Numbered from the stretch's first letter, positions 28,201 to 37,200 are shown. The stretch is DNA of 64,000 bases from Macrostomum lignano (GCA_002269645.1 NIVC01000064.1:586942-650941), one strand, 5' to 3'. Numbers and translations: made by a program. The notes: generated by a model from the sequence alone, not told the origin.

Positions 28201-31200
28201 AATTTAATTACTGTTATCCAGTTAAATCTAATTATTTACACTCCTTTATGAAGTCAAAGTTCTTAGTGCTCTTTATCAATTTAATATCAGTGTTTTCGAA
28301 ATAACTTTTTTGTTTTACTTTTCAAGCTGCTTAGTCATTAATTTCTTTGATTTAAACCTGTTTTTGTATAGCTCCTCACATCTATATTTTTTTGCAAGGC
28401 TTTAGTACCCCAACCAATCAGAGTGCTTCAATTTACTCTTTTTCATTTACTTTCTGTACACATTTTTACTCAAAAATGCTCAGAGCTGCCCTTCCAAGCT
28501 GGTATATCAATAATAAGGTAATGGTAAATAACTTCACTGCCAATATTTTTTGTTTTTATACCCTAAAAATAAACCCTGATGGCCTGAAGAAGGCCCGGAT
28601 CTGGCCAAAATATAGGTCGATTTAACAAATCCATAAGGGGATTCCTACTCTGTGTGCGTAGTTTTGTTTTGACATTCGTCTGTCTATCTATCTCTATCAA
28701 TCTACCGGTAGGATATACCTACCAATAGCCGCACCTGGCATAACTCTAAAAACCAGCAAACAAACCCAAAAAACGACCGACGCCAGCAAGATCGTAACCA
28801 GCCGAGTGGCCTTGGCAACAGATCCCGAAACGAATCATCTACTGGTTACGCTCGGGGCAAAAACTGACATGGGCCTAATCTTGAAAACGCCGCACTACAG
28901 ACCATAGAACCCGTGATCACGATCATCTTGAGCCTCGCCGTAACACCCGTCATGATCCACGTGATGACAACCGCCGTGGTTCCCGCAGCGACGGTTGCCG
29001 GTTTCCCCGAGGCCCTCGCGCTGACACCCGTCAAGAAGCTCACCAGCGGACTCCGATGTCGACAAAAGCCGCACGAGTTGCCCGCCTCGTTAAGCAACTC
29101 TTCCGAGCGGCGCAACACTTGGAGAACTGACGAGTTGTCCCGAGTGGGGTGCACCGCAAAACCGAACAGCTAAAAAAATTTATTCGGCCGGCCCTTCATA
29201 CCGAAGCGACGCAACAATGCGTGCATGACAACGCTTTGACATGGGAGCTGAGCGCCCAGGATACAATGGAGAACCATTATGAGCTATGCCTTTTCTGCTT
29301 GTCAGCCGAAATCGAGGATGCCAGCAAGAAGGTCGACACGAGTCAGCTGCAAACGGGCTGACGTGTTAGCTTCCGCTGGGCATTGTAAGACCTCGGCAAA
29401 CGATTCGCTTGCTATCGAGAGGTGCTACGCGCCCACTTCCGTCACATGTGGATCAAAATGGTAATCCCATATTTAGATAATACTGGTGAGCCACTTTTCG
29501 TCTGTAAAAGCGTACTAAGAATTAACCCACCGGCCTCTCCTCTCCGTATGTTTAATGAGGAACCAAGCTTGCTCAACCTCGACGGTGACGGGAGGCTGGA
29601 AGGACTCCAAACCTCCGACCGACGCAATGCAATCGTCAGAGCTAATTGTGCAGTTGCAGGGTCGAGTCGCCAGTGCTCAGGGACTCGACACAGGGGTGGT
29701 ATGCGATCAGGCATCCCCACCTGCAGGCAGCAATGGTGCTCTCAATGAACATCTATCTACTGCTGAGCCGCACACGTCCGCCATCACTATCGACGACTCA
29801 CAATCGCAGGGTAGAGTCACCAGCGCTGGACAGTATTGGCCTTGAGGACAGTGTTCACTTAACAGCAGCCTCCGACCAAGAGTCCATCCTGCAGGACCGA
29901 CCCACCTGTGCCCAGGAACCCAAAGTAGGCGCAGACTGTCCTCAGTCACCACAGGCTAGCGCGCACCCCACCAAAGCTCGTATATAAACATTAAAGTTAT
30001 GATAAAATAAGTTCACTGCCAAAATAATCGTTGTCTTTATACCCAAAAAATAAATCCTGAAGAAGGCCAGGTTCTGGCCGAAAAATCGGTCGATTTAAAT
30101 AAGTTCGATTTGACTTATCATTAAGAGAATTCGACTCTGAGTGCGTGGCTTTACTTTGGCATTCGGCTATATCTTCTCCCGCGACCAGTGATTGGTTTTC
30201 TCTCGGTGTGCCGTCTACTCACCCCGCTAAAAATTAACTCATGACCAAAATGAGCACAAGCGCTAATATTTACAGCTGATACTACTAGACGTTCGAGCCT
30301 ACTATGACTACGATTACGACGTTGAAGACTACTACTATATTCTACTACTACTACTACCACTACTGTTACTACTACTATTAATCTGCAATCGATCGGCAGT
30401 GCCCAGGGGCTGTGCAGGCGGCGGTCTGTGACCAGACGCCGACAACTGCGACTCGTGGCCTGACTGGCTACTTCAAATAACCTCTACTAGTACGACTCTA
30501 CTATGACTACGACTAGGACTACTACTACTACTGCAACTAATACAGATGATCGGCAGTGCCCAGTCGCCTGTGTCCAGGGGCTGTGCAGGCGGCGGTCTGT
30601 GACCAGACGCCGCCAACTGCGACTCGTGGCCTGACTGGCTTCTCGTTCTCAATTACTGTTGGTGTATTTGCATTTAATTATTTACAATACTTTAAGCAAT
30701 CCAAGTTCTTAGTGCTCTTTATCAATTTAAGTTGTGTTTTCGTAATAAATTTTGTCGTACTAGTCAAGATGCTTAGTCATTCACTTTTTTCTAAATCAGT
30801 TTTTCTGTAGCTCCTCACATTTATTTTCGTTATTATCCAAGGCTTTAAAGCTGCAACCAATCAGCGTGCTTCAATTCATCCTTTTTATTTTAAGTACACA
30901 TTTTACTCAACGCTGCTAAGCGCACCCCTCCAAAGCTCGTATATAAATATTAAAGTTATGATAAAATACCCCAAAAATAAACCCTGAAGAAGGCCAAATC
31001 TGGCCGAAATATCGGTCGATTTAAATACGTTCGATTTGACTAATCATTAAGAAAATCCGACTCTGAGTGCGTGGCTTTACTTCAGGTGTCCCAAATTTAT
31101 TTAGATTACTGCTGCTATTTGAAGAGTGAACTATAGCTACAGCTGTCAGCGCACCACATGCTACCATAGACAGTACCGAAGACGCACAAGAGATTTAAGT

Positions 31201-34200: not shown

Positions 34201-37200
34201 ACTTCGAGCATCGCCAGTTTGGGAACCATGTTGAAGTGCAAGAGGCGACGTTGCAGTGGGCAAGGGGTTTGGAGATTGAGAGCCTGCAGCAGGAGTTGCA
34301 TCAACTTTGGGATCACTGCGACGCTGTTATTCAATGCCAAGGAGATTACGTCACTGACTGATGGTTTGTTTTGTTGCTGCAGTTGATATTGTTAAATTTA
34401 GCGAGAAGTCTAAATAAATTTGGGACACCCGAAGTTGGTGTTCGGCTTTGGAATTCGGCTATCTATCTATCTATCTATCTATCTATCTATCTATCTATCT
34501 ATCTATCTATCTATCTACCTATCTATCTACCTATCCAGCTGCCTTAATCGTTTCCGGTGATCTTGTGTGCGTGCTTTTAGCTTGATTGGCTGCGGCAAGC
34601 AAGCTCGAAAGAACTCGCTTCGCTCGCTCTTTCTCGATATCTACTATCTGTCTATCTGTCTATCTATCTATCTATCTATCTATCTACCTATCTATTTATC
34701 TATCTATCTATCTATCTATCTATCTATCTATCTATCTACCTATCTATCTACCTATCTATCTACCTATCTATCTACCTATCTATTTATCTATCTATCTATC
34801 TATCTATCTATCTATCTATCTATCTACCTATCTATCTACCTATCTATCTATCTATCTATCTATTTATCTATCTACCTATCTATCTGTCTATCTATCTATC
34901 TATCTATCTATCTATCTACCTATCTATTTATCTATCTATCTATCTATCTATCTATCTATCTATCTACCTATCTATCTATCTATCTATCTATCTACCTATC
35001 TATCTACCTATCTATCTATCTATCTATCTATCTATCTATCTATCTATCTATCTATCTATCTATCTACCTATCTATCTACCTATCTATCTATCTATCTATC
35101 TATCTATCTATCTATCTATCTATCTATCTATCTATCTATCTATCTATCTATCTATCTATCTATCTATCTATCTATCTATCTATCTATCTATCTATCTATC
35201 TATCTATCTATCTATCTATCTATCCATCCATCTATATATCTATCTATCTACCTATCTATCTATCTACCTACCTATCTATCTACCTATCTATCTATCTATT
35301 CTGCACCTCACCTCAGCCAGCTGAGCCAGTCGCTGGACGGATTCCTCGGACAAGTCGACATCTTCGACAACGGACCAGGCGCCTTTAGGCTGGAATCGGA
35401 CGGGAAAGCTGAACACCCGACCGGGCGGGATGCCGTACCAGCCTGCGAGATTTCGGTAAGAGGGGTCGGGTTGTGTGTTTAGACACAGGTCAGATCGCTA
35501 GCTTAGTAGTTGACTAAGTTAAGTTGAGTTGGCCGCGATTAGTACGTTGCAGTTAATAGGCTCAGACAGTCTCACCCTCGGACACAACTCCTAACGAGTA
35601 GATCTCGTTGCCAGAGCCGCCCAGCCACCAGTTGCGTACCGTGTCAGCTGTGGCCTGAGCAGTGCTCAGCGCAGCCGATCGTGGCCCAGTTCCGCCTAGC
35701 AACAGATTGTTATCCTGTCGCTGACGCATTGTTTTAGGAAACTCCTGATTGAGCCATTTCTTATCCCAAACTGTGTCCAGCACAGGCTGGTTGTAGCTGT
35801 CCGGTCCCGTGATTGACCCGTCGTAGTAGTGCACCCGGGCCCGGCTCAGGTCCACCAGGTTCTCCCCGGCCGGGTCGCCCCAAACTATCAGGTCCACCAC
35901 GCTGGACGGCAGCACCTGGATAGGGTAACAAGCGATTGAGACTTAATGTATAGGTCACTCAGTTCATCGGACAGTAGGTCACTCAGTTCATCGGACAGTA
36001 GGTCACTCAGTTTATCGGACAGTAGGTCACTCAGTTTATCGGACAGTAGGTCACTCAGTTTATCGGACAGTAGGTCACTCAGTTTATCGGACAGTAGGTC
36101 ACTCAGTTTATCGGACAGTAGGTCACTCAGTTTATCGGACAGTAGGTCACTCAGTTTATCGGACAGTAGGTCACTCAGTTTATCGGACAGTAGGTCACTC
36201 AGTTAATCGGACAGTAGGTCACTCAGTTTATCGGACAGTAGGTCACTCAGTTTATCGGACAGTAGGTCACTCAGTTTATCGGACAGTAGGTCACTCAGTT
36301 TATCGGACAGTAGGTCACTCAGTTTATCGGACAGTAGGTCACTCAGTTAATCGGACAGTAGGTCACTCAGTTTATCGGACAGTAGGTCACTCAGTTTATC
36401 GGACAGTAGGTCACTCAGTTTATCGGACAGTATCCGGGCCTTCAAGGAGGTTCCGGCAAAAGGCGCTCCCGGCAAGACCCTGTACATGGGTTTCTCCGCG
36501 GAGTGGGAAGACGCCCTCAAGAAGGACGATTTTGCCGCCTACATCGGAGCGTGGAAGATCGTCTTCCACCTGCTGCTCAGGCGTCGTCCAGCCGGCGATC
36601 GGCGCCGAGGTGAGTCCGTGAGCTCGGATAGCTCTGGGAACGAGTAATGCCGTTCCCAACCCCGTGCCAAACTAGGAGCGGGGCGCTGAGGGCGAACCTT
36701 AACGGCCAGCCCAATGATGACACTGCCACCAGCAACCAAATAAATAATCCGCCGCCGGCGAACCAACCTGTTAACCTGCACATTATTCAGATCAACCTGC
36801 ACCACGCCCTTGCAGCATCTAGCAACCTTTCAGGCACCTTTGCCAACAAGGAAGTTGACATCTACCTTATTCAGGAACCGTATACCCGCAAGGGGAAGCC
36901 GACCTGCCTGCCGCCAGGCTATCAGGTTCTGTACCTCTGCGCGAACGACACCCCCAGAGCTATCGCCCTCGTCAAAAACGACCTCCCGGCCACTATTATG
37001 CCAATGTTTTGCTCTAAAGACATGTGTACTTTCTCAGTCTTTGACTTGACCTTCGTTTCCGCTTACCTGGACATTCAGGAGGACGTCCCTCCCCCCTCCT
37101 GCAGGAGCTGGCGGACTTCTGTAATCTCCAGGATCGGAAGCTTATCGTTAGCTGCGATGCTAACGCCCACAACACTGCCTGGTCTAGTAGCGATACTAAC

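What the first reader, a model, noticed from the sequence alone, without database searches (positions are those of the whole stretch)
31080..34434. Mariner ends enclosing a catalytically complete tyrosine recombinase: nested Crypton or two-recombinase composite
Seen: near-perfect mariner TIRs enclose 3.35 kb containing a YR ORF with all six catalytic positions (R,K,H,R,H,Y), upstream of a thrice-broken DD34D transposase on the same strand. The simplest reading is a Crypton inserted in the mariner 5' UTR, since removal restores ~1.33 kb. With intact TIRs, the unit could be moved in trans as a cargo-carrying mariner that spreads a YR (inference). Established: DUF3504 Cryptons are the source of domesticated KCTD1, KIAA1958, ZMYM and QRICH1 genes, and intact animal copies are uncommon.
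Basis: partly seen in the sequence, partly recalled or inferred. Interest (0 to 1): 0.8.

Follow-up and report, generated by a model that had tools for sequence, protein, structure and literature searches.

The report
Crypton transposon nested inside dead mariner
A 2.0-kb tyrosine-recombinase transposon (Crypton) has inserted into the leader of an already ordinary, now broken 1.35-kb mariner transposon in an animal genome; this is most likely a one-off case of one jumping gene landing in another, not a new two-enzyme element.

Summary
Mariner-family inverted ends (31080-31110 and 34404-34434) enclose 3,355 bp. Inside, on one strand, are a DUF3504-type tyrosine recombinase (YR) gene and a DD34D transposase broken three times.

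I mapped the inner element to the base. It is a 2,008-bp Crypton (31237-33244) bounded by a 6-bp direct repeat, TTTATG (31237-42 and 33245-50). It sits 38 bp upstream of the transposase ATG. Removing it leaves a 1,347-bp mariner with a 201-nt leader. Solo relatives measure 1.37-1.41 kb with leaders of 203-285 nt.

One correction is needed. The YR has all six catalytic residues, but its gene is not intact. A +1 frameshift near 31749-31762 cuts off the conserved first 48 codons, and the 410-codon frame has no ATG before codon 65.

Related Cryptons occur alone, in several non-mariner contexts. No second composite copy could be found, because the host genome is not in the searchable collections. 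A mariner-plus-Crypton composite is already known from Fusarium (MarCry-1_FO).

Verdict: an ordinary nested insertion. Two minor points are new: the terminal architecture of this animal Crypton clade, and an unexplained Crypton-type motif in mariner leaders.

The parts
31078..31079 (.). TA target-site copy, left of the mariner
   Evidence: Sequence. Related mariners are flanked by TA on both sides in several contexts.
31080..31110 (+). Left terminal inverted repeat of the mariner (CTTCAGGTGTCCCAAATTTATTTAGATTACT)
   Evidence: Position 5 is A here, but G in the right repeat and in all related family members.
31080..31236 (+). Left part of the mariner 5' leader (157 nt)
   Evidence: It lies outside the Crypton homology. 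Together with 33245-33288 it gives a 201-nt leader, as in relatives.
31163..31175 (-). Crypton-type motif (ACCATAGACAGTA, the inverse of TGTCTATGGT) inside the mariner leader; unexplained
   Evidence: I9. The 10-mer is expected about 3e-4 times in 157 nt.
31237..31242 (+). TTTATG, left copy of the 6-bp direct repeat at the Crypton junction (presumed crossover core)
   Evidence: The same TTTATG sits at the left end of the related Crypton L001 (nt 26-31).
31237..33244 (+). Crypton (CryptonA/DUF3504 type), 2,008 bp counting one core copy
   Evidence: The left end is homologous to the empirically defined left end of Crypton-X, L011 (TTATGTATAAGATAAC vs TTATGAATCAGATTAAAC). The right end CTATGGTTTAT aligns with GCATGGGTTAA. 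BLAST homology to L001 starts at 31237.
31247..31359 (+). Left-end palindromes: hairpin 1 (31247-31307) and hairpin 2 (31325-31359). Between them lies 31311-31325, a perfect inverted copy of the right terminus 33235-33249.
   Evidence: (I4, I7). DNA fold z-scores are -3.6 here, -10.1 in L001 and -11.7 in L011.
31391..31509 (+). Two direct TGTCTATGG motifs upstream of the YR gene (31391-31399 and 31501-31509)
   Evidence: (D2). The same layout is found in L001.
31605..31763 (+). YR gene, N-terminal 48 conserved codons in frame 0, ending at TGA 31761-63
   Evidence: It aligns to the N-termini of P0001 and P0004.
31749..31762 (+). +1 frameshift in the YR gene (10-nt excess relative to P0001)
31771..33003 (+). 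YR main reading frame (410 codons) with catalytic codons R 32344, K 32440, H 32710, R 32719, H 32788 and Y 32815
   Evidence: dN/dS against L001 is 0.155.
33116..33244 (+). Right-end motifs: TGTCTATGG (33116-24), AATCCCGGA (33164-72) and the terminal TTATCTATGG (33235-44)
33245..33250 (+). TTTATG, right copy of the junction repeat
33251..33288 (+). Right part of the mariner leader, including the family-conserved GCCTACTGCAACGCC (33261-33275)
   Evidence: It matches L006 leader 175-196 and similar motifs in L008 and L024.
33289..34361 (+). DD34D mariner transposase pseudogene. Lesions: TAG 33337-39, out-of-frame deletion at about 33808-33815, TAA 33939-41. Catalytic codons: D 33793, D 34065, D 34170.
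   Evidence: The nearest solved structure for the family is the Mos1 transposase, 1e-20.
34404..34434 (-). Right terminal inverted repeat
34435..34436 (.). TT where the second TA target-site copy is expected (one substitution)

Best explanation
This is a single nested insertion. A 1.35-kb DD34D mariner inserted at a TA. Later, or in a source copy, a 2.0-kb Crypton of the animal DUF3504 (CryptonA) kind integrated into the mariner's 5' leader, 38 bp upstream of the transposase ATG and in the same orientation.

Integration went through the Crypton's own tyrosine recombinase. A circular Crypton recombined with the target at a short shared core, TTTATG, which now flanks the element as a direct repeat. 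This step is inferred from the junctions and from the published Crypton model.

Both elements have since decayed. The transposase has two stop codons and one out-of-frame deletion. The recombinase has one frameshift. The unit is therefore a fossil. It encodes no working enzyme, and nothing shows that it ever moved as one piece.
For: Boundaries of the inner element:
- A related Crypton (P0011, loci L011-L014) is 100% identical across contigs over 1,908 bp, and its flanks differ between them (three distinct left flanks, three distinct right flanks). This gives its true ends.
- Its left terminus, left-end palindrome and right terminus align with window 31237 onward and with the sequence ending at 33249.
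- BLAST homology with the closest Crypton, L001 (75% nt identity), starts exactly at 31237.
- The 6-bp TTTATG occurs at both junctions.

The restored mariner:
- It is 1,347 bp with a 201-nt leader. Relatives have leaders of 203, 247 and 285 nt and lengths of 1.37-1.41 kb.
- The family-conserved leader motif lies directly after the right junction.

Cryptons move on their own:
- L011-L014, L009, L010 and L017 have no mariner transposase beside them.
- dN/dS of 0.155 between the window YR and L001 shows a lineage long maintained as a working recombinase gene.

The lesions are documented.
Against: - Copy number in the host genome could not be measured, so a multi-copy composite is not excluded.
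- The mariner leader outside the Crypton carries one Crypton-type TGTCTATGGT motif (31163-31172). The leader of a solo mariner from the species that hosts the closest Crypton carries a 28-40-nt Crypton-like site (p <= 0.002). This hints that the association may not be purely accidental.
- The single YR frameshift could be an assembly error.
Confidence: 0.75

Rival explanations
1. A MarCry-like composite transposon. After the nesting event the whole 3.36-kb unit was, or still is, copied around the genome by mariner transposase supplied in trans, so the mariner ends spread a tyrosine recombinase.
For: - The inverted repeats are nearly intact and belong to a family whose members occur at many TA sites with 100% identical copies.
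- A published precedent exists: MarCry-1_FO has four copies over 97% identical, 16-bp TIRs and TA duplications (PMC3212892).
- The lesion counts (3 in 1.07 kb against 1 in 1.4 kb) do not differ significantly (my binomial estimate, p about 0.2), so equal age of the two parts is not excluded.
Against: - There is only one copy in 64 kb.
- No protein more than 55% identical to this transposase was found in the 5.8 billion protein clusters searched. A scan of JGI metagenomes with the TIR found no mariner copy.
- The insertion puts 2 kb between the leader and the transposase gene.
- The left TIR has A at a position that is G in every relative.
- From my own knowledge of Mos1 and Himar1, mariner transposition falls steeply with element length.
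- The right target-site copy is degenerate.
Confidence: 0.12
2. Targeted nesting. The Crypton recombinase recognises TGTCTATGG-type sites, and mariner leaders in Crypton-bearing genomes carry such a site. Cryptons of this clade would then lodge preferentially in mariner leaders. This could be recurrent, and may lead to exchange of leader and Crypton sequence.
For: - TCTATGG/CCATAGA occurs 6 times in the 3.36-kb unit (about 0.4 expected) and 7 times in the other 60.6 kb, which is chance level.
- One copy (31163-31172) lies in the mariner leader, outside the Crypton.
- The leader of solo mariner L005-L007, from the same sequencing project as the closest Crypton L001-L004, has a site matching Crypton sites in both species (p < 0.002 and p = 0.002).
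- That leader also shares a 12-mer with the 25 nt flanking L001 (p < 2e-4).
- Three other lineages of the mariner family lack the motif.
Against: - The crossover point is 65 nt away from the leader motif.
- Crypton-X inserted into unrelated AT-rich sites that are not mariners.
- The L001 flank shows no significant similarity to the window's mariner leader (p about 0.2).
- The motif could instead be a shared promoter element, or chance after many comparisons.
Confidence: 0.1
3. An assembly artefact: two unrelated repeats joined by mis-assembly.
For: The window is extremely rich in tandem repeats.
Against: - Both junctions show the same 6-bp core.
- The two mariner halves fit together into a normal-length element.
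- The leader pieces are colinear with relatives.
A chimera would not produce this.
Confidence: 0.02

Closest known systems
CryptonA (animal Cryptons with a DUF3504-type tyrosine recombinase; Kojima & Jurka 2011, PMC3212892; Glomhopper paper 2026, PMC13465315)
   Same: - A single gene encoding a YR with the full catalytic set.
- DUF3504 and QRICH1 similarity.
- No reverse transcriptase and no C-terminal GCR1_C domain.
- No long terminal repeats, and a short direct repeat at the ends.
- A size of about 2 kb.
   Different: - Kojima & Jurka found no terminal repeats in animal Cryptons. This clade has a 3-6-bp junction repeat and a conserved palindrome 4-6 nt from the left end.
- It also has an inverted copy of the right terminus about 75-130 nt inside the left end, and arrays of two short motifs (TGTCTATGG and AATCCCGGA).
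- This particular copy has a frameshift.
MarCry-1_FO of Fusarium oxysporum (PMC3212892)
   Same: A YR gene and a mariner-type DDE transposase lie within one pair of mariner inverted repeats at a TA target.
   Different: - MarCry has a CryptonF recombinase (with GCR1_C) in a fungus, and four near-identical copies prove that it moves as a unit.
- Here the recombinase is CryptonA type in an animal, only one copy is known, both genes are broken, and the Crypton still has recognisable ends of its own.
DD34D mariner elements (Mos1, Hsmar1/SETMAR)
   Same: - Inverted repeats of about 30 bp starting (C)TTCGGGTGT, compared with CCAGGTGT in Mos1.
- A TA target, a D,D34D triad and paired N-terminal helix-turn-helix domains.
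- Mos1 is the best solved-structure match for the family (1e-20).
   Different: - It is a divergent family. Pfam scores it as DDE_3 rather than Transposase_1, and the third-aspartate motif is SPDFNLCD.
- The leader is long, at 200-285 nt.
- This copy is a pseudogene.
Tec1/Tec2 of Euplotes (DDE transposase plus YR; cited in PMC3212892)
   Same: Two recombinase types occur in one element.
   Different: In Tec elements both genes are integral parts of the element, and the YR is thought to resolve intermediates. Here the YR belongs to a separable inserted element.

Membership tests
Crypton (CryptonA group) | Encodes a tyrosine recombinase with the catalytic R-H-R-Y tetrad (plus K and the second H) | tested here: met
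   R192, K224, H314, R317, H340 and Y349 are present.
Crypton (CryptonA group) | The YR is similar to DUF3504, which DIRS and Ngaro recombinases are not | tested here: met
   Pfam DUF3504 2.9e-24 and QRICH1 domain 9e-8. PDB QRICH1 1.5e-4.
Crypton (CryptonA group) | No reverse transcriptase, RNase H or methyltransferase in the element, and no C-terminal DNA-binding domain | tested here: met
   Within 31237-33250 the only reading frames with a Pfam family match are the YR frames. The RT at 38022-40463 lies outside the mariner ends.
Crypton (CryptonA group) | No long terminal repeats; short (4-6 bp) direct repeats at the termini | tested here: met
   TTTATG at 31237-42 and 33245-50. The boundaries are inferred from homology to L011 and L001.
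Crypton (CryptonA group) | An intact gene, or evidence that this copy is mobile | tested here: not met
   A +1 frameshift lies after codon 48. Mobility is shown only for a relative: identical copies with differing flanks between contigs.
mariner (DD34D, Tc1/mariner superfamily) | Terminal inverted repeats of about 30 bp | tested here: met
   The terminal motif is shared with relatives.
mariner (DD34D, Tc1/mariner superfamily) | TA target-site duplication | tested here: inconclusive
   TA on the left and TT on the right. Relatives have TA on both sides.
mariner (DD34D, Tc1/mariner superfamily) | A D,D34D catalytic triad in a transposase with N-terminal HTH domains | tested here: met
   D 33793, D 34065 and D 34170, with spacing 34. 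DDE_3, HTH_32 and HTH_48 hits. The family's best solved-structure match is Mos1.
MarCry-like composite transposon | YR and DDE transposase genes inside one TIR pair | tested here: met
MarCry-like composite transposon | Several near-identical copies of the whole unit at different TA-flanked sites | not testable with these tools
   The host genome is absent from the collections. The TIR scan of metagenomes found only a satellite. There is a single copy in the window.
MarCry-like composite transposon | Functional transposase (in cis) and recombinase | tested here: not met
   Three lesions in the transposase and one in the YR.

The most novel reading that the evidence does not exclude
An animal counterpart of MarCry, or a real affinity between the two elements. 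Under this reading, Cryptons of this clade recognise TGTCTATGG-type sites that also occur in the leaders of the mariners sharing their genomes. They would then repeatedly lodge in mariner leaders and could be carried along by mariner transposase. This would be the first CryptonA-mariner composite, and a case of one transposon family targeting another.
Probability: 0.1. Interest if true: 0.6.

Novelty: new member of a known kind. Interest (0 to 1): 0.3.

Why it matters
As it stands, this is a routine nested transposon insertion, useful mainly for annotation. It does give base-exact ends, a junction core and a conserved terminal architecture for an animal Crypton clade. Boundaries in this group have been called hard to define, and terminal repeats had been reported absent.

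If copy counting in the host genome showed the composite to be multi-copy, it would be only the second known Crypton-mariner composite and the first in animals. If Cryptons proved to favour mariner leaders, it would be a rare documented case of one DNA transposon targeting another.

Tried and rejected
1. Exact-protein look-up of the 410-aa frame found nothing on record, and no 100% hit appeared in the protein search. The host genome is not in the collections, so composite, solo mariner and solo Crypton copies could not be counted.
2. A search with a frame-corrected transposase gave a best identity of only 55%. No close mariner copies are available.
3. A JGI metagenome scan with the 20-nt TIR core gave two contigs. 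Both are a roughly 300-bp satellite that happens to contain the 20-mer, with no transposase.
4. I tested whether the closest Crypton (L001) also sits in a mariner. Its 25-nt left flank is not significantly similar to the window's leader (p about 0.2). It shares a 12-mer with the L006 leader (p < 2e-4), but the similarity does not reach the junction. The contig ending about 30 nt beyond the junction fits a k=31 graph branch. That would arise equally from a repeated flank or from a presence/absence polymorphism, so it does not decide the question.
5. I considered an alternative left boundary at the outer motif (about 31160). I rejected it because it would leave a 119-nt leader and a 1.27-kb mariner, shorter than every relative, and because homology to L001 and L011 starts at 31237.
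6. I considered a tiny intron in place of the frameshift. I rejected it because GT...AG would span only 14 nt.
7. I considered a link to DIRS or Ngaro through the RT at 38022-40463. I rejected it because that ORF lies outside the mariner ends and beyond a microsatellite, and the YR is of the DUF3504 type.
8. A literature search for the SRA run numbers of the related contigs gave no hits. A search with the Hakai-like host gene shows the host is a metazoan with no close named relative.
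Full report
**Observation.** The inverted repeat is real. Arms 31079-31110 and 34404-34435 are 91% complementary over 32 nt, the first 26 nt differ at one base, and nothing else in the 64-kb window resembles the unit. The enclosed 3,355 bp hold, on the + strand, a 410-codon frame (31771-33003) and a transposase. The 410-codon frame matches Pfam DUF3504 (2.9e-24), Phage_integrase (4.9e-10) and the QRICH1 domain (9e-8). The transposase has its ATG at 33289 and its stop at 34359-61. 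It is interrupted by TAG at 33337-39, by an out-of-frame deletion of roughly 13 nt at 33808-33815, and by TAA at 33939-41. The catalytic aspartates are at 33793, 34065 and 34170, with 34 residues between the last two. The window contains no other YR or mariner transposase.

**The outer element.** A search with the frame-corrected transposase found a family of 349-371-aa proteins, at most 55% identical. For the intact relative P0122, the best solved-structure match is the Mos1 mariner transposase (1e-20), followed by SETMAR. Pfam gives DDE_3, HTH_32 and HTH_48. Contigs carrying four of these relatives (L005-L008, L018-L024) show complete elements of 1.37-1.41 kb. Their ends read CT(T/A)(T/C)GG(G/T)TGTCC...GGACA(C/A)CC...AG and are flanked by TA, and their 5' leaders are 203, 247 and 285 nt. 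One of them occurs in at least six different contexts, each with TA duplications. The window's ends, CTTCAGGTGTCCC and CTTCGGGTGTCCC, belong to this family, so 31080 and 34434 are the true termini. The left flank is TA and the right flank is TT, one substitution from TA. Base 5 of the left repeat is A, whereas it is G in the right repeat and in every relative. It lies in a CpG context, which fits decay by deamination.

**The inner element.** The closest YR homologue is P0001 (475 aa, 67% identical). It lies on four 1.86-1.99-kb Logan contigs, L001-L004. A more distant homologue, P0011 (47%), lies on four contigs that are 100% identical over 1,908 bp and then diverge on both sides. This gives the empirical ends of a related Crypton, which I call Crypton-X: T|TATGTATAAGATAACC on the left and GAAGCATGGGTTAA| on the right. 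The 5' non-coding region of Crypton-X is recognisably homologous to the window. Compare CCTGAGGGATTTAAGTATAATAACTCCCC...TTATCTCATTTAACCCATGC with 31263-31322, CCCGAGGGATTTATGAAAATAACTCCCG...TTATCTCATATAAACCATAG. The left terminus TTATGTATAAGATAAC corresponds to TTATGTAGAAGATAAAGC in L001 and to TTATGAATCAGATTAAAC at 31238 in the window. BLAST homology between the window and L001 begins at exactly 31237. The right terminus GCATGGGTTAA corresponds to TCTATGGTTTAT, which ends at 33249.

**Junctions.** Both junctions carry TTTATG, at 31237-42 and 33245-50, and L001 has TTTATG at its left end as well. This is the short terminal direct repeat expected of Cryptons, which are thought to integrate as circles by recombination at a 4-6-bp shared core (PMC3212892). 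Counting one core copy, the Crypton is 2,008 bp. The remainder is a 1,347-bp mariner with a 201-nt leader, which agrees with its relatives. Directly after the right junction lies GCCTACTGCAACGCC (33261-75). This motif sits just upstream of the ATG in the related mariners L006, L008 and L024.

**State of the recombinase gene.** The six catalytic positions (R192, K224, H314, R317, H340, Y349 in the 410-aa numbering; codons 32344, 32440, 32710, 32719, 32788, 32815) are all present. The gene itself is not intact. The conserved N-terminus ([22 protein letters not shown]..., also present in P0001 and P0004) starts at ATG 31605 in a different frame and runs into TGA at 31761-63. Between the shared ATG-AA(A/T) and GAT-(T/C)TA codons the window has 46 nt where P0001 has 36, that is three extra codons plus one base. 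The long frame opens with GTG only under the bacterial code, and its first ATG is codon 65 (31963). A protein starting there would lack part of the conserved N-terminal domain. The only GT...AG pair spans 14 nt, so this is not an intron. A one-base assembly error cannot be excluded. Between the window and L001, dN/dS is 0.155 with dS about 1.3. The lineage has therefore been maintained as a working gene, and this copy died recently or is only apparently broken.

**Architecture of the Crypton ends.** The heptamer TCTATGG or its complement occurs six times in the unit. About 0.4 occurrences are expected there, and the other 60.6 kb contain seven, which is chance level. Five of the six are inside the Crypton:
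- one inverted copy at 31316;
- direct copies at 31393, 31503, 33118 and 33238.

L001 has the same layout. The 15 nt at 31311-31325 are a perfect inverted copy of the right terminus 33235-33249, and Crypton-X has the same feature (TTAACCCATGC inside, GCATGGGTTAA at the end). A second motif, AATCCCGGA, alternates with the first. A palindrome begins 4-6 nt from the left terminus in all three elements. DNA folding z-scores are -10.1 for L001, -11.7 for L011 and -3.6 for the window copy, which looks degraded. Kojima & Jurka reported no terminal repeats in animal Cryptons. The 2026 Glomhopper study again found boundaries hard to define. These details are therefore modestly new. That these motifs are recombinase binding sites is my inference.

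The indirect evidence favours one-off nesting:
- The Crypton keeps complete ends of its own, with a junction repeat.
- Related Cryptons are found alone. Crypton-X sits in unrelated AT-rich flanks, and L009, L010 and L017 have no mariner transposase beside them.
- Both genes are broken.
- The insertion separates the transposase from its leader by 2 kb.
- A family-invariant TIR base is mutated.

From my own knowledge of Mos1 and Himar1, transposition efficiency also drops sharply with length. The lesion counts (3 against 1) do not differ significantly, so they say nothing about the relative ages of the two parts.

**Unexplained observations.** One Crypton-type motif (TGTCTATGGT, inverted, 31163-31172) lies in the mariner leader outside the Crypton. 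About 3e-4 occurrences are expected there. The solo mariner L005-L007 comes from the same sequencing project as the closest Crypton, L001-L004. Its leader has a 28-40-nt stretch matching the Crypton sites of both species (p < 0.002 against L001 and p = 0.002 against the window Crypton, by shuffling). That leader also shares a 12-mer with the 25 nt that flank L001 (p < 2e-4). Three other lineages of the mariner family lack the motif. This could mean that the Crypton favours mariner leaders, that the two elements exchanged sequence in the past, that they share a promoter element, or that it is chance after many comparisons. The L001 flank is not significantly similar to the window's leader (p about 0.2).

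**Comparison with what is known.** The inner element meets every testable criterion for a CryptonA-type Crypton except integrity of the gene. The outer element is a divergent DD34D mariner pseudogene. A mariner-Crypton composite is already described: MarCry-1_FO in Fusarium has a CryptonF recombinase and four near-identical copies with TA duplications. As of 2026 it was still cited as the only Crypton with a DDE transposase. Euplotes Tec elements also combine a DDE transposase with a YR. The statement that intact animal copies are uncommon does not match present data. Of the 120 nearest protein clusters, 105 keep all six catalytic residues and 101 are at least 400 aa long, and many come from megabase-scale assemblies. 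The host is a metazoan, because a Hakai-like gene lies at 57578-58822. Its best named matches reach only 43% identity over the matched segment (about 31% of the query), so the phylum is unresolved.

**Verdict.** The nested-Crypton reading is supported at base resolution. The composite reading remains untested and is the less likely of the two. Interest is low to moderate.

Noticed in passing
window 1-64000 (for example 5304-6776, 17564-18553, 22609-23603, 52283-53756, 54237-55860, 58911-59863): The window is unusually dense in minisatellites. Tandem Repeats Finder gives 53 rows, with many arrays of 0.5-1.6 kb and units of 17-143 bp. Most long 'ORFs' in the window are artefacts of these arrays.
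   Followed up: no
window 34459-35299: A (TATC)n microsatellite of about 185 units starts 25 bp after the right mariner end.
   Followed up: no
window 38022-40463 (+), with upstream ORFs 36647-37219 and 37453-38124: An 813-aa ORF carries reverse transcriptase (1e-30) and RNase H (7e-13) domains, with no integrase domain detected. This is a separate retroelement whose type was not determined. No YR is associated with it.
   Followed up: partly
window 57578-58822 (-) and 61421-62119 (-): A Hakai-type RING/zinc-finger ORF has its best named hits (43% identity or less over about 31% of the query) in flatworm, fly, tick and vertebrates. There is also a ricin-B lectin ORF. These are probable host genes and show the host is a metazoan with no close named relative.
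   Followed up: partly
window 31425-31480: Two adjacent G+C-rich hairpins (GGGGGCgatgaGCCCCC and GGGGGCagaGCCCCC) lie in the Crypton 5' non-coding region. They are absent from the related Crypton L001, which has a second AATCCCGGAG/TGTCTATGG pair there instead.
   Followed up: no
L005-L007 (nt 82-120 of L006) and L001 nt 1-25: The solo mariner from the species that hosts the closest Crypton carries a Crypton-like TGTCTATGG site with similar flanks in its leader. It also shares the 12-mer ACACAAGCTATT with the flank of that Crypton.
   Followed up: partly
L015, L016 (JGI metagenome contigs): A satellite of about 300 bp contains GGGG(G)TCCCAAATTTA... next to GGGGGCCCTGTGCCCCC hairpins. One variant monomer matches the mariner TIR core over 20-21 nt. 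This is probably chance, but a TIR-derived origin was not examined.
   Followed up: no
L001 nt 1-31: The Logan contig (unitig assembly, k=31 from my own knowledge of Logan) ends about 30 nt beyond the Crypton's left junction. This is what a k=31 graph branch would give if the flank also exists without the Crypton, whether as a repeated flank or as a presence/absence polymorphism. It hints at recent Crypton mobility in that species.
   Followed up: partly
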